Source of the DNA: Octopus bimaculoides
Taxonomy: Eukaryota
Assembly (NCBI RefSeq): GCF_001194135.2
Contig: NC_068986.1
Location: 106,629,904 to 106,693,903, forward strand
Reading direction: 5' to 3'
DNA length: 64,000 nt
Below are positions 14,036-62,885 of this stretch, one piece after another. Numbering within the stretch: the stretch's first letter is position 1; each line of letters opens with the position of its first letter. The notes beneath the pieces are model-generated. The model worked only from the letters and a program-made list of their open reading frames with translations. It was not told where the DNA came from and did no database searches. The translations under genes were made by a program, and so were the position numbers.

Positions 14036-15311
14036 NNNNNNNNNNNNNNNNNNNNNNNNNNNNNNNNNNNNNNNNNNNNNNNNNNNNNNNNNNNNNNNNA
14101 TATATATATATATATATATATATATACGATGGGCTTCTTTCAGTTTCCATCTGCCAAATCTACTCACAAGGCTTTGGTCGGCCCGAGGCTATAGTAGAAG
14201 ACACTTGCCCAAGGTGCCACGCAGTGGGACTGAACCGGGAACCATGTGGTTCGTAAGCAAGCTACTTACCACTCAGCCACTCCTCTACGTCTGATAAGAA
14301 AAATATGAAGAAAGTTTATCTTTGTTACACCTTTTTACTTACAGCTCACCATAATGTTCGTTATTGGGTTGAGACATGATATTTCGTTACAATGCTCCAA
14401 TGATGGGTTTATACGCCTACCCTTTTCACTACAGAAGCAACTTACTTCATCGTTACATCCGTTACAACCTGTAAAAGAAAATACGTTTATGAAGACTAAA
14501 AACAAAAGACATGCTATTTCGCTGTTTGACGGGGGGGGNNNNNNNNNNTTAGTGGTTGATCTGGTTTAGTATGAATGCTGCGTGAATCAAATTCCTTCAA
14601 TTATGATATTTGATTGGTAGGTCTTAGTAAGTGTCGTATTCGTGTGAATGACGAAAGCGCGCATGAGCAGAGGCCAGCAGAGGCCAGCAGAGCAGCCAAT
14701 ACTGACTCCTTGTTGTCTTTGTTGATAATCAAGAGACCGATAAGAAACTGATGCGGCTTTGAGGATTAACGGTGACGGCTGATTAGCCAACGATATCTAG
14801 AAAAGCGTGATAATTAATTTACTGTGAAATATCGATGAAATTAGTATTTAGTTGACAAATATTACACTTTAAACTTTTCGACTATATCAATATGTTGTGA
14901 GTGATATTTTATTGTATTTTCCTTTGAATTTCATTCATTTTCTTTAAATATTTCTTATCAAGATGTAGTAAAGACACAAAAGAATGATGATTATTGTTTT
15001 AATTAAGAATGTTTATGTTAATTACACTTCTTGATTTTCTTTTACAAATTTACATACTGGGGTTCAATAAGTTAAAAAAATTCCTTCAAAGGTTTGATGA
15101 TATAAGACGTTTACCGACCTGTACTCAAGAAATTTCATGGATATGATGAAAAATAACTTTGCATGCTGCATGGAAAGAAGCCATGGAGGCTTTTAATGGG
15201 GAAATATATCAGATGAAAACTTAAGGAATATTGAAGCTTACCAAATGGAGCATTCGTAACACCGTTAGGGAGGATTAGAAGTGAGAACAAAGTTACCGGA
15301 AATATATACAT
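7764..15311 (-). CDS. Gene A: intact 89-aa secreted six-cysteine protein (possibly beta-microseminoprotein/PSP94-like); join(15311-15242,13165-13034,7831-7764)
   Basis: The 70+132+68=270 nt spliced ORF has canonical GT-AG sites and two phase-1 introns. Protein: MYIFPVTLFSLLILPNGVTNAPFDCKDTEGQCLTGDYFAFGATDFRCRSLYCRVPPIEFKKVTRYDQICKLERENKNEKYLIYENRLEC*. Exon sizes are identical in the paralogs. N gaps in the last intron could hide extra exons. Confidence 0.85.
8828..9129 (-). mobile_element. tRNA-derived SINE, family 2 (gtggaggcgcaatggcccagtggttaggg head), 3' part lost in a gap
   Basis: Reverse complement matches the copies at 47416-47798 and 61284-61662. Confidence 0.9.
10294..10515 (+). mobile_element. 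3' end of a CR1/L2/Jockey-group LINE with an A-rich tail
   Basis: CSSLGFRGPQLLNALPKHLRD..FKTKLDAFLSTVPDEP..NSLIHQ is a characteristic LINE ORF2 C-terminus, followed by aaaaaataaaaaaataa. Confidence 0.75.
11672..11826 (-). mobile_element. SINE family 1, 3' half (remainder in gap)
   Basis: (actctttt)n tail plus cttgtttcagtcatttgactgc..gccgaacggctaagttac. Confidence 0.9.
13034..13165 (-). CDS. Gene A Cys-rich exon (D)CKDTEGQCLTGDYFAFGATDFRCRSLYCRVPPIEFKKVTRYDQ
   Basis: Acceptor ttctttcag|, donor |gtatgt, 132 nt. Ungapped alignment to 37002-37133 includes synonymous substitutions. Confidence 0.88.
13767..14284 (-). mobile_element. SINE family 1, near full length, in gene A intron 2
   Basis: Tail, body, internal microsatellite and head are all present. 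It is absent at the homologous position in B and D (aactcgtctgataag). Confidence 0.9.
15242..15311 (-). CDS. Gene A signal-peptide exon MYIFPVTLFSLLILPNGVTNAPF
   Basis: ctaacag|ATG acceptor, donor |gtaagc, hydrophobic core. Four copies of identical length (70 nt) occur in the window. Confidence 0.88.
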
Positions 15312-17758: not shown

Positions 17759-17778
17759 CTCGGAATTCTGAATGAGAG
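17759..17778 (-). other. Gene A 5'UTR exon (20-nt core, or 3' end of a ~130-nt first exon)
   Basis: tttttttag|CTCTCATTCAGAATTCCGAG|gtaagt; homologous at 41900-41919, 55019-55038 and 62663-62682. Confidence 0.65.
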
Positions 17779-17879
17779 CTAAAAAAAACATATGACAAAA
17801 TGAAATTAACTAGTGTTGCAAACTTTTTCAGAGTCTGGGTTACTTTAACATACAGCCGCCGTATGTGGTATATGGATAC

Positions 17880-49553: not shown

Positions 49554-52233
49554 TTAGCATTCAAATCGATTCAAATAGACAACATATTTCCAATTTCCAT
49601 ATTTACGATCCACAATGCAAACTGTATAAGACAGTATTTGTTAATAGGAAAGGTCATTGTAAATTTGTTTGATTTTTGTGAAAATAATAGCGACCTTAAG
49701 AGTCTTATTTTTTTTTCCACAACATTAGTAATATGACAGGATTATACGAGATAGTTGAAATTATGTAGCAAACATCAGTATTATTAAAATTCGACAGTAT
49801 ATTTGCAAATGTTCCTAAACATTCATGCACACTCAATCACCCCCACAATCATACACAGAACACATGCACGTACATTCACATGTCCATACACACAAACACA
49901 TGCATGGTGGGTGGAAAGTAATTAGGCATTAAAAATTGCTTATAGAATTCCTAGTATCACAGGTCATGGCAAAACCATTTTTTAAAGTGACAACATTAAT
50001 GAGAATTTATTATTTTTTCATTGTCTTATTTTATATATCTTATTTTCCCTGATGGCCAGTCGTTTGACTATTCAGGTGCGAGCTAAGGTAGCAGGACGCT
50101 ATGAAGTATAGAATTCCATTGTTTTGGTTCAGAGATGGTGATGTGCATGTCTTTTATGAGGAAGTGTACAAAATCAATAATGTAGGCGATTGTAATGTAT
50201 TTTGGCGATTTAAATAAGAGCTTTAAATCTTACTTCCAGCAGGTGGACATACTTAGCATGTCCTTTGATTAATTTTAATCCTTCAGTTATTTAAGGCTTT
50301 TTTGGGGCCTGCGATCGCCTAAATTATTGATTCTATTATTATCATTTTTAAATTGTAACACAAGATAATAATAGAGTCAATGATATCTTCGCAAATATTT
50401 TCTCTGTATTGAAATTATTTTCAGACACAAAACGACTCAGTTGTAACGCAGACTTCACCGTGACGAGTTGGGGCTCTCCATCATGGTAACGCGTCCTGAA
50501 AATGGCGGGGGCTATTATGCCGGTCCAGAAACCAGTCCACGTGAGTCCAGATACTTGAATGTATTCTTTTATTCTTTTACTCTTTTACTTGTTTCAGTCA
50601 TTTGACTGCGGTCATGCTGGAGCACCGCCTTCAGTCGAGCAAATCGACCCCAGGACTTATTCTTTGTAAGCTTAGTACTTATTCCGTCGGCCACTTTTGC
50701 CGAACCGCTATGTTACGGGGACGTAAACACACCAGCATCTGTTATGAAGCGATGTTGGGGGGGNNNNNNNNNNNNNNNNNNNNNNNNNNNNNNNNNNNNN
50801 NNNNNNNNNNNNNNNNNNNNNNNNNNNNNNNNNNNNNNNNNNNNNNNNNNNNNNNNNNNNNNNNNNNNNNNNNNNNNNNNNNNNNNNNNNNNNNNNNNNN
50901 NNNNNNNNNNNNNNNNNNNNNNNNNNNATATATACATATATACGACGGGCTTCTTTCAGTTTCCGTCTACCAAATCCACTCACAAGGTTTTTGTTGGCGC
51001 GAGGCTATAGTAGGAGACACTTGCCCAAGGTGCCACGCAGTGGGACTGAACCCGGAACCATGTGGTTGGTAAGTAAGCTACTTACCACACAGAAACTGAG
51101 TGATTGTCTTAATCTGTTTGCCTTCGGACGGTTGATTTCTGCAGTTTTTATCAGTGTATCTTGGCGATTTAAATAAGAGCTTTGACTGTTATTTCCAGCA
51201 GGTAGACATACTTAATATACCCTTTGATTAATTTTAATCCTTCATGAAAGTACATACTTTTGCATATGGATTCTGTCATCGTCGATTTCAGATCAACTAA
51301 TTAACCTCCTCCTCGAAATAATGCTGTGAATTAGCAGCTCATTTTACTGACACATTGTTTTCATGTAATTTTCAGATTGAATTAGCATGACACGTTACTA
51401 CAAAGGTAAACGTTTGAATTTCAGTTGTATTTCCTCTGTGTACATGTACGTGTACAAACCATAATGTGCGTGCAATTTGTACTGACAATGCTACGTTAGA
51501 CGTGTCTCCGTATGTATCAGGTCATTAAGAATGAAATTTCCGATTTTCTTATGCACGAAGTTTGACAGACGTTAACTTTAATGTTTCGTGCAATGTTTTA
51601 CAACATTGGAGATTTACATTTCGAAATGCAATTCATGGTGTCTGACTATATTGTGAGTTTTCTCTTGTAAATTAATTTTTGTGAACCCATGGATAGATAA
51701 AAAATTCGTGTTGTTAATGAATACGAGTTCCGTCGGGGAACCAATGCATCCCAGACAGATCGAAACATCAATGAGGTGTTGGGAAAGATGTTTCGAGTGA
51801 GCACAATGGAAGTTGATGGTTTGAAAAGTTCTGGCCTAGTGACTTTACTCTTGAAAATCCTCCCCGTGGTAGATCTGAGACAAAGGTGTATAATGACGAG
51901 CCGGAAACGGTAATGGAAGTGGATACATGTCAAATAACGTGTGAGTTAGCGGCAAGATTTGATGTTTCGATTCCAAATACATTGGACCATCTGAAATAAA
52001 TCAGCAAAGTAAAGAAGCTGGACATGTGGATGACACACGAACTGAACGAGCATCAAATGGTACGTCGTCTTCAAACTTGTTCTTCTTTGCTGTCACGTCA
52101 TAAAAACGAACCACTCTTTCAGTGTATTGTTACGTGTGATAATTTCAGACTATTGAAGCTTACATTCTGGAACGTTCGTAACTCCTTTGGGAAGGATTAC
52201 AAGGAGGAACAAAGTTGCCAGATATGAATACAT
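49554..52233 (-). CDS. Copy C: exon-3-deleted paralog, in frame; join(52233-52164,49621-49554) gives a 45-aa precursor (or a young pseudogene)
   Basis: Protein: [45 protein letters not shown]. Both exons are intact with canonical splice sites and matching phase 1. No 132-nt exon lies between them; the only gap there is inside a SINE. Confidence 0.55.
50563..51092 (-). mobile_element. SINE family 1
   Basis: Tail, body and head region flank an N gap. Confidence 0.9.
51517..52140 (+). mobile_element. 3'-truncated mariner transposon (left end plus the N-terminal half of the transposase)
   Basis: TA|tcaggtc.. left end. Translation MDR*KIRVVNEYEFRRGTNASQTDRNINEVLG..WFEKF..DFTLENPPRGR..ELAARFDVS..KVKKLDMWMTHELNEHQMVRRLQTCSSLLSRHKNEPLFQCIVTCD matches the mariner HTH and WVPHEL-like motifs. 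It ends at the first catalytic D. Confidence 0.85.
52164..52233 (-). CDS. Copy C signal-peptide exon [23 protein letters not shown]
   Basis: ctaacag|ATG ... T|gtaagc; 70 nt; synonymous changes versus B (GGT/GGA, AAT/AAC). Confidence 0.75.
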
Positions 52234-53374
52234 CTGTTAGTAAAGAACCACAAATAAAATATCTCATGATATTCCGTATTTCCCTAATATTGTTGCTAAA
52301 TTAATTCCTACGAAAATCTCGATCATTAAAACAAAATTAACATTCAAATATGAGGCTGGTGATCACCTCCTGCATTTACTTTGTCTCTCATACTTTAGTG
52401 GGCGACCCTGTTACTACGTGTAAAATACCGGAAGAAATGTGTGTTATAGTGGCCTACCCGGAATACTAGAGGTATCATGTTGATGTTGAGGGAAGTTATA
52501 ACGCCTTGCATTATATATAGAAGCACGTAAAATATTTTGTTTTGATTCACGTGTTCCAGAATAAAGAACAGAATATCAACTTCGCTTAATAATTAATATT
52601 AAATCCTGTATAGCCAATGCCAATATTCCCAAAATTGAAATGGAACATTGGGAACATATTTGCGAAAGTGATTTGACATGAAACTGTGCTTAAACTAAAT
52701 CAATAACACCTGGAAGCCATATATTAGCCATTCAAAAACACACAAAGCCTCTTAAGTTTAATTAAACATTTATTATTTGGTATTAAACCTTTCGTAGTAT
52801 TAATGGGGACCTGCACACTCACGCAAGACGTTTGGTTCACAAATAGTAATTCACAGTAGAAAACATATTGAAAATAGTACAACCCTTCGACTTTATATAA
52901 CCATGACAGCCTGTTACCAGCCACTGAAAAACAGTAACTGAATCCTCGATACATGAACATATTGATAATCCTTCCTTGTAAACGTACAATTGAAGAAAAG
53001 TTTAGAAAGGGGACTATTTGATCATATCGATCTCAGCATTCATATGTTTATTTTATTGAGACCGAACATCACTTCAGAAGGAAATGAAATTTTAATGTTT
53101 CATTGCAAATAAAATGTAACACAGGAGATCCGACATCAAACACAATGGATGTATCCATAAAATACACCAGAGCATAATATTACTCACCAGAAAAGAAAGT
53201 GTACATACGAGAGAGAGTTAATAATATGTCTCTTTTTTAGTTTTTTAAAAGAATAGCAGCTGACATATCATTCTGAACATCTATAAACAGCCATCAGTAT
53301 AATGTAACAATCACAATTGCACGTAAGAATATATCCATACACAAATATAGACATGTATACATATAGACTGAGGA

Positions 53375-53407
<33 letters not shown>

Positions 53408-53993
53408 TGTATGTATGTATGTATGTATGTGTATGCGAATATGCATATATATGTGTATATATGTATATGTATGTATANNNNNNNNNNNNNNNNNNNNNNN
53501 NNNNNNNNNNNNNNNNNNNNNNNNNNNNNNNNNNNNNNNNNNNNNNNNNNNNNNNNNNNNNNNNNNNNNNNNNNNNNNNNNNNNNNNNNNNNNNNNNNNN
53601 NNNNNNNNNNNNNNNNNNNNNNNNNNNNNNNNNNNNNNNNNNNNNNNNNNNNNNNNNNNNNNNNNNNNNNNNNNNNNNNNNNNNNNNNNNNNNNNNNNNN
53701 NNNNNNNNNNNNNNNNNNNNNNNNNNNNNNNNNNNNNNNNNNNNNNNNNNNNNNNNNNNNNNNNNNNNNNNNNNNNNNNNNNNNNNNNNNNNNNNNNNNN
53801 NNNNNNNNNNNNNNNNNNNNNNNNNNNNNNNNNNNNNNNNNNNNNNNNNNNNNNNNNNNNNNNNNNNNNNNNNNNNNNNNNNNNNNNNNNNNNNNNNNNN
53901 NNNNNNNNNNNNNNNNNNNNNNNNNNNNNNNNNNNNNNNNNNNNNNNNNNNNNNNNNNNNNNNNNNNNNNNNNNNNNNNNNNNNNNNNNNNNN

Positions 53994-54025
<32 letters not shown>

Positions 54026-55018
54026 GCCCTCTTTTATATGTGTATATCCATATGTATGAGGATTAACTCAGATGAAGAGTATTATATACGTAACAAAGTA
54101 ATTTAAGTGCCAGTAACAAGGTCGTGCTTGTGCGACAAAAATTCTGAAGTTTCATCAAATAAAATGAATTTGATTTTAACAGTTTTTTGAGCTAGTTATT
54201 TACTACACTGATTTAGCTAACGTATAAAACAAAATATAATAGCGACAAGATAATTCGCACCAGCATCAACGTGATAGAGCGTTATCAGGCTCTATTTTGA
54301 CAAATCGCATGCACAGCTCTTTTCTCTCATGCAGCAGTTTTCAATAGCCACCAATTCCATTTCAGCAGAAATGAATAAATATATAAATAAATAAACACGT
54401 ATCTCTGGCGGGAAATGTTATAAAAGAAATGCATGAGTTGTGCCGGATTCTAAAAAAAAAATACAATTATCAAAGTAATGAATATTCAGTGTGAGGATAA
54501 TTGTTGGTACAACCTCAGCTACCAAATATTGCAATAGCAACCAGAAACAAGAGCACAGAAATCGCATCATAAGATGCTAAGTAGGGAGCCTACACGTTTT
54601 AATGGACCTGCTAGAAATATCAACCAAATCTTCCTAGTATCCTTCGTTATTGCGTAAATAATTTGATAAAAAGGAAAGACTATGCCTGAAAACAAAAATA
54701 GTACGTGACGTCCACGAATAGAATATATTTTGATCATAGAATTTGTTTTAATCGCTCGTGTAAATTAAACAACAATAATTACTATTTCAAAGTCGTGTTC
54801 CACCTATGATTTCGAGAGGAATTTCACGCAAAATAGATTCAATATTATTAGTGTGATGAAAGTGTAAAATAATTACAAGACATTTATATTCAAAACGAAA
54901 GGTAATTAATGTCCGTGTCATCCGTCTAGGGATTAATTATAATAGGTCTTTGTGTCACATTTCATAAACAAAATGAAAAGAAATTCAGTTCTAAATTGCT
55001 ACTAGACATGTAACTTAC

Positions 55019-55038
55019 CTCGAAATCCTGAACGAGAG
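55019..55038 (-). other. Copy C 5'UTR exon core
   Basis: tttttcag|CTCTCGTTCAGGATTTCGAG|gtaagt. Confidence 0.6.
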
Positions 55039-55134
55039 CTGAAAAATATTTAACAAATTAAATTAACTAGAATTGCAAACGTTTTCAGAATTTCAGTTTA
55101 TGTAACATACAACCGCCGTATGTGGTATATGGAA

Positions 55135-55245
55135 ACTGTAAACATACATTCTCTACATGAATTTCTGGTTTATAGCTATAATACAAATAGGTTTTAGGTT
55201 TGCAATGACATGTTCATTGTTAGTTTTACTATTAGCGTTTAACAC
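55135..55245 (-). promoter_or_regulatory. Copy C core-promoter block, TATAAA at 55169-55174
   Basis: Near-identical to the A and B blocks. Confidence 0.6.
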
Positions 55246-56682: not shown

Positions 56683-56870
56683 GAGCTGTCGAGTGGTACC
56701 CACACGATGGAAAGCGTTCAATCGGAAGACCTCCACACAGGTGATATGATTCAAAAAAAATGTTCGGTACAACGTAGAGGAGAATGGTGTGAGAACGATG
56801 GGAATGGAGCGAATGCTGTGCGAGTGGAGCCGACGCGGCACGAGACATTCTGGCCTATCTAGTTGATCCA
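56683..56870 (+). mobile_element. RTE-like LINE 3' fragment near the C/D junction
   Basis: AVEWYPHDGKRSIGRPPHR*YD resembles the RTE W.P...KR..GRP..RW.D motif. Confidence 0.6.
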
Positions 56871-58523
56871 GGTGAAGTAAATATATTTAACCGTAATCAC
56901 AAACCTGGTGACACCTCCTCCATAGAGTACAGAGGTATCATTACATTCTCCAGGTGGATTTCCGTGCGCAACCAACTGAGACTATGAATATTTTACAATC
57001 ATCTCGTTTTTTTATCTACCCCGAGGTTTCCTGCAGGTTGCCGCCTTAAAGCATACGTTCCCTGAGTCTTTCCTATGTCATTCTAACCGTATATCCAAAG
57101 TACTGGTGCTATGCTGACTCTTATTGCGAAGTAACTGCTCGACCTGGAGAGATGCTTCGATTAAATAGCCTTAAAAGGTAACCTGGCAGTAAAGTAATGA
57201 TAAATTTGAGATTTATTCTTATGGAGTAGTAATTTTTATTTCAAACCTAACTGTTAATCAGTTGCTAACTATTTTCCCTCATTGGACGATGTCCGCCATA
57301 ATCTATTTTGGATCTGACGCTTTGTACAATTTTAAATTCTGATAAACAAATTTCTGGAAAAAGTTTCTACATCTGTTCTCCTCAATATATTAATACACTT
57401 ACATCTATGATTAATACTCTACGTGCTAGAATAGTTTACGAAACGCAGTTAATATATTTTCACTAATAAATGTAGAAAATGCTACAAGAACGAACGTAAA
57501 AGCTGATAACTTAAATAACCTTATTCAATAAATATGTAAGTATTCACACATAAAGACAAAGCCAATAGTTAACTCATCTGCTATGAAAAATAGGAAGAAA
57601 GTATATATTAATTACTATTCCTTACAGGTTCTCAGCGTTTTCGTTACTGAGGTGATACGAGTTATTTCTTTATAACCATCCAATAAACCTGTATGTGTAT
57701 TCTGATCGCTACAAAAGCAACTTGAATGATTGTAACCTACGTGACAATCTGTAAAGGAAATGCAAGTATTAACGCTAAAAAAGACAAGTTATTTTTCTGT
57801 TTGACGGGTTGGATCAGTGATTTAGTTTATGTGGATTAGTAAAAATTCTTCTCGAACTAAATTCCTTCAACTATTAGATTTGATTGCTAGGTCTTAATAA
57901 GTGTCGTAATCGTGTGAATGACGAAAGCGCTCATGAGCAGAAGCCAATACAGCAGTCAATATTGACACCTTGTTATCTTGGTTGCTAACCAAGGGACTGA
58001 TAAGAAGCTGAAGCGACTTTGTGTATTAAGGGCGCCGGATGATTAGCGAACGGCATCTAGAAAAGCGAGATAATTAATTTCCAGTCAAATAGTGATGTAA
58101 TTTGTATTTAGTAGACAAATATTTATTGTTAAATTTTTCGACTATATCAATATGATGTTAGTAAATTTTTATAGTATTTTACTTTCAATTTCGCTTCGTA
58201 TTTTCATTCATTTTCTTTAAATATTTCTTCTTAAACGTGGTAATTTCACAAAAAAATGAAGGTTATTGTCTTAATCTAGAATTTTTGTTTTGTTAATTAT
58301 ACTTCTTAATTTTGTCATAGAAATTTACACGAAAGGTCCAATGATATAAGACGTTTACCGACCTGTAACTAAGAGGTGTGAAATATTTCATGGTTGTGAC
58401 GAAAACTTACATTGCATGCTGCATGGAAAGAAGACATGGAGGCTTTTAATGGGGTCAATTATGATCTTATACACTCATCATATTCATTATCAAAGACGAA
58501 AACTTAAGAATATTGGAGCTTAC

Positions 58524-58593
58524 CTTCTGGAGCATTCGTAACACCTTTGGGAAGGATTACAAGAAGGAATAAAGTTACCGGAAATGTATACAT
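58524..58593 (-). CDS. Copy D signal-peptide exon [23 protein letters not shown]
   Basis: ctaacag|ATG ... G|gtaagc; 70 nt; intact. Confidence 0.65.
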
Positions 58594-59689
58594 CTGTTAG
58601 TAAAGAACCACAAATAAAATATCTCATTATTTTCGGTATTTCCTTAATATTGTTGCTAAAGTAATTCCTACGAAAATCAATTATTTAAACAATATTAACA
58701 TACAAATATGAGGCTGGTGATCGCCTCCTGCATATACTTTGTCTCTCATTATCCAATGGCCCACTCGATTCCTACGTGTAAAATACTGACGTAAACGTAT
58801 GTCATAGTGCCCTACCTGGAATACTGGGGTATTAAACCTCATGTTGAGAGAAGTTATAACGCTGAATATCATATACCGAAGCACGTAAAATACTTTGTTT
58901 AGAATCGCGTGTTCCAGAATAAAGAACAGAATGTCAACTTTGCTTAATAATTAATATCAAATCCTATAGAGCCAGTGACAATATTCCCAAAATTGAAATG
59001 GAACATTGGAGACATATTTGCGAAAGGGATTTGACATGAAACAGCGTGCTTAAATTAAATCAGCATCGCCTGGAAGCCATATATAAGCCATTCAAAACCA
59101 CACAAAGGCTCTTAACATTTATTATTTGGTATCACAATTTTCGTCGCATTAATGGCGACCTGCTCAGACATGCAATCCTATTGGTTCAAAAGTAACAATT
59201 CCCAGTAGAATATATAATGGAAATAATACAAAACCTTCGACTTTGTATAACTATGACAGCTTGTGAGAAGCCACTGAAAAACATAGTAACTGAATCCGCG
59301 ATACAAAGAATATTGATAATCCTTTCTTGTGTACGTACAATTCAAGAAACGTTTAGAAACTGGTCTATTTGATCATATCGATCCCAGCATTCAGATGCTG
59401 CTTCTCCTATCGACAGCGTAATTCGCTTCAGAATGTAATAAAATTTTTATGTTTCATTGAACAAAGTGTATGCCAGAAGTGCGCCGAGTACACGTGCAAT
59501 AAGTGTATCCATAAAATAAAACAAAACATAATATAACTGTCTAGACAAGAAAGTCAAATAAATTTCAAGACAAAGAAATTGAAAACACAGATTATAGTAG
59601 AAACTTAAAAAAATAGGAAGTGTCTAACAGAAACAAGAAAACAAAGCGTGCTTGCATAAGTAGTTAGTTTTGTTGCGTTAACGGTCGTT

Positions 59690-61283: not shown

Positions 61284-61662
61284 GGTTGAGGCGCAACGGT
61301 CCAGTGGTTAGGGCAGCTGCCTCGCGGTCGTTGGCAGTTTGGATTCCCAGACCGAGTGTTGTGGGTGTTTATTGAGCGAAAACAACTCAAAGCCCCACGA
61401 GGCTCCGGCAAGTGGAAGTGGTGAACCCTGTTGTACTCACATCACAACTTTCTCTCACTCTTTCTTCCTGTTTCTGTTGTACATGTATTTCAAAGGGCCA
61501 ACCTTGTCACACTCTGTGTCACGCTGAATCTCCCCGAGAACTACTTTAAGGGTACAAGTGTCTGTGGAGTGCTCAGCCACTTGCACATTTATTTCATGAG
61601 CAGGTTGTTCCGTTGATCGGATGAACTGAAGCCTCGTCATCGTAACCGACGGAGTGCCACGA
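61284..61662 (+). mobile_element. SINE family 2, full length, diverged
   Basis: Head gaggcgcaacggtccagtggttagggcag; end gtaaccgacggagtgcca. Confidence 0.88.
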
Positions 61663-62769
61663 CATATGTATACATCGATAAGCACAAACTCATATTCATA
61701 TGAAAAACATTATATACGTAGCAAAGTAATTTAAGTGCCAGTAAATAGTCTGAAGTCGTACAACAAAAATATTGACATTTCAACCAATAAAATTAATTTC
61801 ATTGAAACAATATTATTTTGCGTAAATAATTAATAACAATTCCAATTATAATGTATATAAACAAAATATAATGGCGACAAGGTGATTCAAACCAGCACCA
61901 ATTGAATACAGTGTTCCCAGTCACATATATTTCGACAAATTGCATGTATAGCTCTTTTCTCTCATGCGGCAGTTTTCAATGCCGACCTGTTCCATTTCAG
62001 TACAAATGAATAAATAAATGAAAAGATGCGAATCCCTGGTTCAATCTGTGGCGGGAAAAGTTATAAAAGAAATACATAAGTTGCGCACAATTCTAACGAA
62101 AAATCAATTTTCAAAGAAATTAATTTTCGGTGTGAGGATTATTGTTGGTACAGCCACAACTATCAAACTTTACGGTAGCAACCAAGAAATTGTTGGAGTA
62201 GGGAGCCTAAAAGCTTTAATGTACTTGCTAGAAATATCAACCAAATCTTCACAATAACGTACGTTATTTTATAACTCATTATATGAGAGGGAAAGATTAT
62301 GACTGAAAAATGAAATATCACAATATCATACGTTATATCATAAATCATTAGAGAAGAGGGAAAGATATAACGTCTACGAATATATTTTGATCATAGTTCT
62401 TTTTGTTAATCGCTCATGTAAATTAAACAACAATAATAATTATTTGAAAAATGCATTCCACCTAGGCCTTCGAGTGGAATTTCACTCAAAATAGATTCGA
62501 TATTATTGATGTGATAAAAGTGTAAAATAATTAAAAGATGTTTATATTCAAAACGAAAGGTAATTAATGTTAGAGCCATATGTCTAGAGAATAATTATAA
62601 TAGTTCTTTATGTCACATTTTATAAACAAAATTCTAAATATGCTACTAGACATGTAACTTGCCTCGAAATTCTAAATGAGATTTGAAAATTATTTGGCAA
62701 ACTAAAATTAACTAATTTTGCAAAATTTTTCAGAGTATGAGTTTAGCCACCGCATGTGGTATATGGAAA

Positions 62770-62885
62770 TCGTAAACATACATTCTCTCCATGAATTTCT
62801 AATTTATATCTATAATACGAATATGTTTTAATGTTTACAATGACACATTCATTGTTAGTTTTGCTATTAGTGTTTAACAGTAATT
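62770..62885 (-). promoter_or_regulatory. Copy D core-promoter block, TATAAA at 62803-62808
   Basis: Homologous to A/B/C but more diverged. Confidence 0.5.

What the first reader, a model, noticed from the sequence alone, without database searches (positions are those of the whole stretch)
49554..52233. Copy C: in-frame loss of the middle exon creates a 45-aa precursor of a single-disulfide loop peptide
Both introns are phase 1, so deleting exon 3 leaves exon 2 joining exon 4 in frame: [45 protein letters not shown]. The two remaining Cys are exactly the pair predicted to bond (PSP94 64-87 equivalent), so the product could be a self-contained ~25-aa cyclic, aromatic- and cation-rich peptide. 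Promoter block, 5'UTR exon, splice sites, stop and AATAAA are all intact. This would be a neat route to a new peptide by domain deletion; the alternative is a recent pseudogene.
Basis: partly seen in the sequence, partly recalled or inferred. Interest (0 to 1): 0.72.

Follow-up and report, generated by a model that had tools for sequence, protein, structure and literature searches.

The report
Truncated octopus gene copy, probably dead
One copy of an octopus-only gene for a small cysteine-rich secreted protein has lost its two middle coding exons through a genuine genomic deletion. The 45-codon frame left behind is real but is an automatic result of the exon phases, and nothing available shows that it is used.

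Summary
The window is Octopus bimaculoides chromosome CM046606.1 (100% identical, same gaps). It holds a tandem cluster, on the minus strand, of an Octopus-only family of secreted proteins with 12 conserved cysteines.

- **The open frame is real.** Copy C joins its signal-peptide exon (52233-52164) to its last exon (49621-49554) in frame and gives the quoted 45 residues. TATA box, splice sites, stop codon and AATAAA are present.
NCBI models of copies A and B have two internal coding exons, of 126 and 132 nt, both phase 1-1. Copy C therefore lacks two exons and 10 of the 12 cysteines. Any such loss stays in frame automatically.
- **The gap does not hide the exons.** N 50764-50927 lies in the intron, inside a single SINE, at the internal microsatellite where three other SINE copies in the window are also gapped.
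- **The deletion junction is in continuous sequence.** Twenty-six nt after the donor (about 52138-52140) the sequence runs straight into a decayed, truncated mariner element. Sequence collinear with B's last intron follows.
- **PSP94 kinship is not supported.** Pfam and a PDB profile search found nothing, and hhalign gave 0.06% probability.
- **No evidence of use.** No protein model for C exists and no constraint is detectable. The neighbouring truncated copy D also keeps open exons.

Most likely C is a deletion-derived relic. The new-peptide reading is untested, at about 10%.

The parts
55012..55177 (-). Copy C: conserved distal promoter-like block (CTATAAAC) and distal first exon, with donor CGAG|GTAAGT at 55019|55018
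   Evidence: It is homologous to the block in copy A that encodes MFFLALIQNSE of NCBI isoforms X1 and X3 (17759-17791). It is 84-87% conserved in A, B and C. Its use in C is inferred.
52884..52899 (-). Copy C proximal TATA box (TATATAAAGTCGAAGG)
   Evidence: Conserved in A, B and C. It is mutated to TATACAAAG in D.
52811..52870 (-). Copy C proximal 5'UTR exon. It is inferred, and its start is approximate. The donor GCAG|GTCCCC lies at 52811|52810.
   Evidence: The CAG|GT donor is conserved in all four copies. No transcript data were available.
52164..52233 (-). Copy C signal-peptide exon (70 nt, ends in phase 1): [23 protein letters not shown] + T
   Evidence: It has four paralogues in the window: A 15242-15311, B 39881-39950, D 58524-58593.
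52138..52163 (-). The only remnant of the intron after the signal-peptide exon. It is 26 nt long. Homology to A, B and D stops here.
51689..52140 (+). Decayed N-terminal half of a mariner transposase. It has two stops and one frameshift. It is cut off in mid-ORF (…IVTCD) exactly at the deletion junction.
   Evidence: Three-frame translation. Pfam HTH_48 (Mos1 transposase HTH), E = 4.4e-10.
51240..51453 (-). Block homologous to the last intron of copy B (32169-32377, 79.5%)
   Evidence: In transcript order it lies upstream of the gap, so the collinear position for the lost exons is in read sequence, not in the gap.
50558..51097 (+). One SINE that contains the assembly gap 50764-50927 at its internal (CA)n/(TA)n microsatellite
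49622..49905 (-). Conserved 3' end of the last intron, homologous to B 30242-30513 and A 7839-7971
49554..49621 (-). Copy C last coding exon: TT + CIVDRKYGNWKYVVYLNRFEC + TAA
   Evidence: Paralogues: A 7764-7831, B 30167-30234.
49487..49492 (-). AATAAA, 62 nt after the stop codon
   Evidence: Copy A has AATAAA at the same aligned position.
57626..58593 (-). Copy D is a second truncated paralogue. Its signal exon is 58524-58593. Its six-cysteine exon, 57626-57748 (123 nt), is degenerate but still open, with 3 of the 6 cysteines lost. It has no later exons.
56685..56692 (-). Junction where D's intron meets the distal upstream region of copy C. The corresponding point in the orthologue of A is about 700 nt before the 132-nt exon.

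Best explanation
Copy C is a truncated paralogue in a tandem cluster of an Octopus-specific gene family. The family encodes secreted proteins of about 110 mature residues with 12 conserved cysteines.

**Shown**
- A non-homologous genomic deletion removed everything between two breakpoints. One lies 26 nt into the intron after the signal-peptide exon. The other lies inside a mariner element in the last intron.
- The lost segment included both internal coding exons (126 nt with six cysteines, 132 nt with four cysteines).
- Every coding exon border in the family is phase 1, so the remaining signal-peptide exon and last exon are in frame by construction.

**Inferred**
- The locus is most likely a non-functional relic (an unprocessed pseudogene). 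Its promoter and splice signals have not yet decayed.
- It may still be transcribed.
- It sits beside a second truncated copy (D), which indicates birth-and-death turnover in the cluster.
For: **Identity of the locus**
- The window is identical to GCA_001194135.2 CM046606.1.
- Copies A and B are LOC128248166 and LOC128248167, and their proteins contain the two internal exons.

**Loss of the exons**
- Peptide and nucleotide searches find the 126-nt exon only in A, B and, degenerate, in D. They find the 132-nt exon only in A and B. No remnant occurs in C.

**The junction is real**
- Paralogue homology stops at 52138, and the mariner ORF stops at 52140 in mid-domain.
- The junction lies inside the uninterrupted read stretch 50928-53477.
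- I estimate from the alignment at most about 4 nt of shared sequence at the join. That makes a misjoin through a shared repeat unlikely (inference).

**Collinearity**
- The rest of C's intron is collinear with B's last intron.
- C's downstream flank is collinear with B's.

**The gap**
- It lies within one SINE, at a microsatellite that is gapped in three other copies.

**No sign of function**
- No protein like C or D exists among 15 billion sequences, although the queries contained their sequences.
- No gene is called in the part of C that falls inside locus L001.
- C-specific changes, counted by eye from the alignments, are about 10 non-synonymous to 3 synonymous.
- Exon identity is no higher than flank identity.
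- Copy D keeps open exons and splice sites despite losing 3 invariant cysteines, its TATA box and its 3' exons.
- The gap-free O. vulgaris assembly also has a copy with only the first two coding exons (L005 78582-79542). Partial copies therefore recur in this family.
Against: - All signals needed for expression are intact: two TATA-containing 5' blocks, first-exon donors, both splice sites of the 2.5-kb intron, ATG, TAA and AATAAA.
- In a neutral simulation using C's own branch length (7.7% substitutions, 0.74% indel events per site), only about 11% of runs kept all signals, and about 8% also kept both cysteines. This is mild evidence against long neutral decay, unless the deletion is young.
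- Each coding exon carries an even number of cysteines (6, 4, 2). Annotated isoforms that swap the last exon mostly lose or gain both C-terminal cysteines together, with one exception, P0017. This is compatible with the last-exon pair forming its own disulfide.
- No transcript data could be consulted, so expression is neither shown nor excluded.
Confidence: 0.66

Rival explanations
1. Copy C is a working gene for a new small secreted peptide. The 45-residue precursor is made, its signal peptide is removed, and a peptide of about 24-26 residues with one disulfide (C25-C45) is released. The peptide arose by deletion of the two large cysteine-rich exons.
For: - The ORF and all expression signals are intact.
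- The intact state occurs in only about 8-11% of neutral runs if the deletion is as old as C's branch.
- The hydrophobic core of the signal peptide is kept.
- The even cysteine count per exon and the isoforms that swap the last exon fit an autonomous C-terminal pair.
- C-specific E-to-G and E-to-W changes raise the loop's net charge from 0 in B to +2 in C (counted by eye).
Against: - No annotated protein and no homologue with this exon junction exist.
- There is no constraint signal.
- The disulfide-pairing argument rested on PSP94 homology, which failed every test.
- The donor lost its -1 G and the acceptor lost 3 T of its pyrimidine tract.
- Copy D shows that open exons persist in dead copies here.
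- A 45-residue precursor is very short for efficient entry into the secretory pathway (general knowledge).
Confidence: 0.1
2. Assembly artefact: the real genome has the two internal exons in copy C, and the short-read assembly lost or misplaced them, either in gap 50764-50927 or through a wrong contig join or scaffold order.
For: - The assembly is short-read, with 25 gaps (8,010 N) in 64 kb.
- Gap lengths are only estimates.
- SINE copies are frequent, at least six in the window, so the two halves could in principle belong to two different copies.
- Only one haplotype is represented.
Against: - The deletion junction (52138-52140) is in uninterrupted read sequence and not at a gap.
- The shared sequence at the junction is about 4 nt at most, by my estimate.
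- The gap flanks fit one SINE in register.
- Sequence homologous to B's last intron already lies upstream of the gap in transcript order. The lost exons would therefore have to be out of order to sit in the gap.
- No orphan copy of either exon exists elsewhere in the window.
- Contig order on both sides agrees with paralogue collinearity.
Confidence: 0.07
3. D and C form one composite transcription unit. Transcripts start at D's or C's promoters and share C's last exon. D's signal exon plus its degenerate six-cysteine exon plus C's last exon are also in frame and would give 86 residues with 5 cysteines. C's 5' part would then act as an alternative first-exon block.
For: - All borders are phase 1, and the D-D-C join reads through to the same stop codon.
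- D's intron runs directly into C's distal upstream region with no 3' exon of its own.
- D's splice sites are intact.
Against: - D's proximal TATA is mutated, and its distal first-exon donor is GC instead of GT.
- D's exon has lost 3 invariant cysteines, which leaves an odd number.
- No such protein is annotated.
- C's own signal-peptide exon would have to be skipped.
Confidence: 0.05

Closest known systems
Octopus 12-cysteine secreted protein family (O. bimaculoides LOC128248166, LOC128248167, LOC128248169, LOC128248170, LOC128248178, LOC106872966, LOC106869804; O. vulgaris CAI9723911, CAI9724926; O. sinensis LOC118763715). All are listed as uncharacterized.
   Same: - The signal-peptide exon is 73-86% identical in nucleotides to those of copies A, B and D.
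- The last exon is 75-85% identical to those of A and B, with the same C-x19-C spacing.
- The promoter blocks are homologous, and C lies in the same tandem array and orientation.
   Different: C lacks the two internal exons that carry 10 of the 12 invariant cysteines and about 80% of the mature protein.
Unprocessed (deletion) pseudogenes and truncated paralogues in tandem gene clusters
   Same: C is an intron-containing paralogue next to intact copies. An internal deletion removed most of the coding sequence. The breakpoint lies in a transposon. A second truncated copy (D) is adjacent.
   Different: The frame, start, stop and splice signals are still intact, because the lost exons are symmetric (phase 1-1). 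No classical disabling mutation is visible.
PSP94 / beta-microseminoprotein (Pfam PF05825; PDB 3IX0, 2IZ3)
   Same: Both are small, secreted and cysteine-rich, and both are encoded by several short exons. There is a faint local resemblance, C-x-D-x2-G-N … C-x-T-x2-C.
   Different: - No Pfam match even at E = 10.
- No PDB match with a family profile at E = 10, although PSP94 chains are in that library.
- hhalign probability 0.06%.
- The octopus family has 12 cysteines with different spacing, against 10 in PSP94.
Single-disulfide loop peptides such as thanatin, arenicin, bactenecin and Rana-box peptides. This is a functional analogy from general knowledge.
   Same: The hypothetical mature product would be a ring of 21 residues closed by one disulfide. 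It is rich in aromatic residues (5 of 21) and mildly cationic.
   Different: - Net charge is only about +2.
- Its existence is hypothetical.
- Its origin would be exon deletion and not a dedicated precursor.
- No sequence relationship was tested or is expected.

Membership tests
PSP94 / beta-microseminoprotein | Match to the Pfam PSP94 model (PF05825) | tested here: not met
   hmmscan of full-length A, B, C and eight paralogues at E up to 10 gave no PSP94 hit.
PSP94 / beta-microseminoprotein | Detectable sequence or profile similarity to solved PSP94 chains | tested here: not met
   - A family profile against all PDB sequences gave 0 hits at E up to 10.
- The PSP94 chains 3IX0, 2IZ3, 1XHH and 6RWC are present in that library.
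- hhalign of the family against human PSP94 gave probability 0.06%, E = 0.75.
PSP94 / beta-microseminoprotein | Ten conserved cysteines with the PSP94 spacing, including a 64-87 pair in the C-terminal domain | tested here: not met
   The octopus family has 12 invariant or nearly invariant cysteines (6 + 4 + 2 by exon) with different spacing. The PSP94 cysteine count and pairing come from general knowledge and from the 3IX0 sequence.
PSP94 / beta-microseminoprotein | PSP94 fold | tested here: inconclusive
   The AlphaFold2 model of copy B, built with a 9-sequence alignment, had mean pLDDT 32 and pTM 0.16. It is too poor for a fold search, so none was run.
Octopus 12-cysteine secreted protein family | Homologous signal-peptide exon ending in phase 1 | tested here: met
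Octopus 12-cysteine secreted protein family | 126-nt exon with six cysteines | tested here: not met
   Absent from C by tblastn and by sensitive blastn.
Octopus 12-cysteine secreted protein family | 132-nt exon with four cysteines | tested here: not met
   Absent from C.
Octopus 12-cysteine secreted protein family | Last exon with C-x19-C ending the protein | tested here: met
Unprocessed pseudogene | Paralogue of an intact neighbouring gene that has lost an essential part of the coding sequence | tested here: met
   Two of the four coding exons and 10 of the 12 conserved cysteines are deleted, with the breakpoints mapped.
Unprocessed pseudogene | Relaxed selective constraint | tested here: inconclusive
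   - Exon identity is similar to flank identity.
- C-specific changes are about 10 non-synonymous to 3 synonymous, counted by eye.
- Only 138 nt are available, and the intact paralogues also evolve fast.
- The neutral simulation gives 8-11% survival of the intact state.
Unprocessed pseudogene | No functional transcript or protein | not testable with these tools
   No RNA-seq access. The only indirect evidence is that no protein model exists for C.

The most novel reading that the evidence does not exclude
Deletion of two symmetric, cysteine-rich exons turned a gene for a 12-cysteine octopus protein into an expressed gene for a secreted peptide of about 24 residues with a single disulfide loop. 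The peptide would be built only from the old signal peptide and the old C-terminal loop. This would be an observed case of a new peptide arising by domain deletion.
Probability: 0.1. Interest if true: 0.6.

Novelty: new member of a known kind. Interest (0 to 1): 0.22.

Why it matters
- **If C is a relic, it is ordinary.** It is one more truncated paralogue in a fast-turning, lineage-specific tandem cluster. It is mainly useful as a caution that phase-symmetric exons leave open frames behind after exon loss.
- **It corrects the gene model for the family.** There are four coding exons, all with phase-1 borders, and cysteines are distributed 6 + 4 + 2 by exon.
- **It removes an unsupported PSP94 label.**
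- **It explains many of the assembly gaps.** They fall at SINE-internal microsatellites.
- **If the 45-residue product were shown to be made,** C would be a clean natural example of a new short disulfide peptide created by exon deletion, in an animal group known for lineage-specific secreted proteins.

Tried and rejected
- **Structure.** AlphaFold2 on copy B with the family alignment gave pLDDT 32 and was unusable, so no fold search was run.
- **Family assignment.** Pfam, a PDB profile search and hhalign against PSP94 were all negative. The UniRef label 'UPAR/Ly6 domain-containing' on paralogue LOC106872966 has no Pfam match either.
- **Evidence that the product exists.**
  - Exact look-up of the C product and of the hypothetical D-exon-plus-C-exon product found neither in the collection.
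  - Three homology searches, two with profiles containing C and D sequences, found only annotated full-length family members.
  - This is weak negative evidence. The clusters for A and B hold only NCBI and UniRef entries, so transcript-derived proteins from octopus runs seem not to be represented.
- **Orthologue of C in a long-read genome.**
  - The O. vulgaris loci L002, L003 and L005 were fetched.
  - L002 is the clear orthologue of copy A, at 82-87% nucleotide identity.
  - Nothing fetched matches C or D at orthologue level; the best matches are 75-82%.
  - The 63 kb between L005 and L002 could not be reached. No O. sinensis orthologue of A to D was returned.
- **O. vulgaris models that skip the 132-nt exon** (P0009, P0012) looked at first like precedents for exon loss. 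The exon is present in the genome at both loci, so they are model choices and not genomic losses.
- **Rfam hits** in 49000-53500 (mir-297, mir-3149, mir-1277) all lie on (TA)n/(CA)n microsatellites and fall below the gathering scores. They were rejected.
- **Literature.** A search for the LOC and XP identifiers found no paper.
Full report
**1. Where the window comes from**

A protein built from copy B's exons hit one cluster, XP_052824997.1, 'uncharacterized protein LOC128248167 isoform X2' of Octopus bimaculoides. The locus fetched for its longer isoform (GCA_001194135.2, CM046606.1) is 100% identical to the window, including every gap. Window position x corresponds to record position x + 106,629,903. 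No independent assembly of this individual was therefore available.

**2. The real gene model**

All genes lie on the minus strand. The coding exons are:

| Coding exon | Length | Content | Copy A | Copy B |
|---|---|---|---|---|
| Signal peptide | 70 nt | signal peptide | 15242-15311 | 39881-39950 |
| Internal 1 | 126 nt | six cysteines | 14343-14468 | 38998-39123 |
| Last | 68 nt | two cysteines and the stop | 7764-7831 | 30167-30234 |

- All three coding introns are phase 1, and both internal exons are multiples of three.
- The 5' end has two candidate first exons conserved in all copies.
  - The proximal one lies behind a TATATAAAG box.
  - The distal one lies about 2.5 kb upstream. NCBI's A isoforms X1 and X3 actually use it (MFFLALIQNSE, 17759-17791).

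**3. Copies in the window**

Peptide and nucleotide self-searches gave these counts:

| Element | Copies that have it |
|---|---|
| 5' module and signal-peptide exon | A, B, C, D |
| 126-nt exon | A, B, and a degenerate one in D |
| 132-nt exon | A, B |
| Last exon | A, B, C |

- C has only the signal-peptide exon (52164-52233) and the last exon (49554-49621).
- D (58524-58593 and 57626-57748) has only the first two coding exons.
- D's intron then runs, at about 56685-56692, straight into the distal upstream region of C.

**4. The observation**

- The C exons join in frame to give exactly the 45 residues quoted.
- The TATA box (52884-52899), first-exon donor (52811|52810), distal first-exon donor (55019|55018), both splice sites of the 2.5-kb intron, TAA and AATAAA (49487-49492) are present.
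- The donor's -1 base is T instead of the G seen in A, B and D. The last acceptor has lost three T of its pyrimidine tract.
- Because the missing exons are phase-symmetric, the in-frame result carries no information of its own.

**5. The gap, tested first**

- N 50764-50927 lies in the intron, so frame across it does not matter.
- Its flanks are the left half (50573-50762) and right half (50928-51091) of a single SINE, on the same strand and in register.
- The one ungapped SINE copy (38143-38540) has only 36 nt of (CA)n/(TA)n between the halves.
- The copies at 5638-6188, 13775-14283 and 48740-49228 carry a gap at the very same internal point. These gaps are assembly failures at a microsatellite.
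- A block homologous to B's last intron (C 51240-51453, matching B 32169-32377) lies upstream of the gap in transcript order. A collinear position for the lost exons would therefore be in read sequence, where they are absent.

**6. The deletion**

- Homology of C to A, B and D ends 26 nt after the signal-peptide exon's donor, at 52138.
- From 52140 downwards the plus strand encodes the N-terminal half of a mariner transposase (MDR…IVTCD). It has two stops and a frameshift, and it is cut off in mid-ORF. Pfam HTH_48 matches at E = 4.4e-10.
- The junction is inside the uninterrupted stretch 50928-53477. I estimate at most about 4 nt of shared sequence at the join, so a repeat-mediated misjoin is unlikely (inference).
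- After the mariner piece come the block homologous to B's last intron, the SINE, and the conserved last 280 nt of the intron (49622-49905).
- C's downstream flank is collinear with B's.
- The simplest history is this: a mariner sat in the last intron, and a later non-homologous deletion removed everything from intron position +26 to the middle of that mariner, including both internal exons.
- It is not resolved whether D and C descend from two complete units with one deletion each, or from a 5' segmental duplication followed by a deletion.
  - The 5' modules are 82-87% identical in all pairs.
  - The upstream blocks are 71-78% identical.
  - The A orthologue in O. vulgaris is 82-87% identical to A.
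  - I infer from these figures that the copies are probably at least as old as the split between the two species.

**7. What the family is**

- An exhaustive HMMER search found ten relatives, all from Octopus bimaculoides, O. vulgaris or O. sinensis. All are listed as uncharacterized, and most lie on the same chromosome.
- The alignment shows 12 conserved cysteines, distributed 6 + 4 + 2 by exon.
- No Pfam family matches. A family profile finds nothing in the PDB at E up to 10, although PSP94 chains are in that library. hhalign against human PSP94 gives 0.06% probability.
- The AlphaFold2 model is unusable, at pLDDT 32.
- The only hint that the two last-exon cysteines pair with each other is indirect. 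Every exon has an even cysteine count, and annotated isoforms that swap the last exon mostly lose or gain both together. One isoform, P0017, is an exception.

**8. Is C used?**

- No protein resembling C or D exists in the 15-billion-sequence collection, even when their sequences were part of the query.
- NCBI calls no coding gene in the part of C that lies within locus L001.
- The A and B clusters contain only NCBI and UniRef entries. Transcript-derived proteins from octopus runs seem absent, so this is weak evidence.
- Exon identity to the paralogues (73-86%) is no higher than flank identity (68-85%).
- C-specific changes are about 10 non-synonymous to 3 synonymous, by hand count. That is near the neutral expectation, but the intact paralogues also evolve fast.
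- A neutral simulation with C's own branch length kept ATG, frame, stop and splice dinucleotides in 11% of runs, and also both cysteines in 8%. The figure would be higher if the deletion is younger than the branch. This is not significant either way.
- Copy D is a useful internal control. It has lost its 3' exons, its proximal TATA box and three invariant cysteines, yet both of its coding exons are still open with intact splice sites.

**9. Other species**

- O. vulgaris (gap-free assembly) has the clear orthologue of A, with all four coding exons in the genome (L002). The annotated model P0009 nevertheless skips the 132-nt exon.
- Further upstream (L005) it has a copy with only the first two coding exons, followed 21 kb later by a complete copy.
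- D's degenerate exon is most similar to the exons of these two copies (about 50% amino-acid identity, against 28% with B). Nucleotide identity to D and C is only 75-82%, so orthology is not established.
- The 63 kb between L005 and L002, where orthologues of B and C would be expected, could not be fetched.

**10. Verdict**

- The sequence facts are right, apart from the exon count. The gap is harmless, and the deletion is real as far as this assembly can show.
- The most likely reading is a deletion-derived, non-functional relic that still looks tidy because the lost exons were phase-symmetric (confidence about 0.66).

| Alternative reading | Probability |
|---|---|
| A genuine 45-residue peptide precursor | about 0.10 |
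| Assembly artefact | about 0.07 |
| Composite D-C transcription unit | about 0.05 |

- Interest is low to modest.

Noticed in passing
window 56685-59651: Copy D is a second truncated paralogue. It has both 5' blocks, the signal-peptide exon and a 123-nt version of the six-cysteine exon. That exon is still open and has good splice sites, but it has lost 3 of the 6 invariant cysteines. The proximal TATA is mutated to TATACAAAG, and the distal first-exon donor is GC. The intron joins C's distal upstream region at about 56685-56692.
   Followed up: partly
window gaps 5812-5960, 14036-14099, 48997-49107, 50764-50927: Four of the 25 assembly gaps sit at the same internal (CA)n/(TA)n microsatellite of one SINE family, which is about 400-450 bp long. 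The copy at 38143-38540 is the only one read through. A fifth gap, 11827-12701, directly follows a left half of the same SINE.
   Followed up: yes
window 17759-17791 (A); homologous blocks 41815-42084 (B), 54915-55207 (C), 62570-62842 (D): A distal first exon with its own TATA-like box lies about 2.5 kb upstream of the signal-peptide exon. It is conserved at 75-87% in all four copies. NCBI isoforms X1 and X3 of copy A use it, and there an in-frame ATG adds MFFLALIQNSE. In B the equivalent ATG is out of frame, and in C there is no ATG.
   Followed up: partly
window 13034-13165 (A, 132-nt exon): NCBI isoforms X1 and X2 of copy A (P0013, P0004) use an internal donor, AAAAAG|GTGACA, inside this exon. 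They then read the last exon out of frame, which gives a 45-residue tail without cysteines. Only isoform X3 has the canonical C-terminus.
   Followed up: partly
L002 23267-23398; L005 104576-104707: The O. vulgaris gene models CAI9724926 (97 aa) and CAI9724927 (313 aa) skip the 132-nt exon although it is intact in the genome. CAI9724927 spans 98.6 kb and starts with a long unrelated N-terminal region. These look like annotation artefacts.
   Followed up: partly
L005 78582-79542: O. vulgaris has its own copy with only the signal-peptide exon and the six-cysteine exon, all six cysteines kept. A complete copy follows 21 kb later. This is the same kind of arrangement as D and C in O. bimaculoides.
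   Followed up: partly
window 51155-51244 and 50196-50285: A 90-nt direct repeat (89% identical) brackets the SINE and about 400 nt of other intron sequence in copy C. Its origin is unexplained. It could be the ends of another element or a small intronic duplication.
   Followed up: no
window 8828-9133, 47415-47807, 61285-61671: A repeat of about 300-390 bp occurs three times in the window, at 84-94% identity. It also occurs many times in the O. vulgaris loci, at up to 92% identity. It is probably a young or well-conserved transposable element.
   Followed up: no
protein family (alignment A5): The family appears restricted to Octopus and has no Pfam or PDB relative. Its 12 cysteines fall 6 + 4 + 2 on three phase-1 exons. 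UniRef labels one paralogue 'UPAR/Ly6 domain-containing', and Pfam does not support that label.
   Followed up: partly
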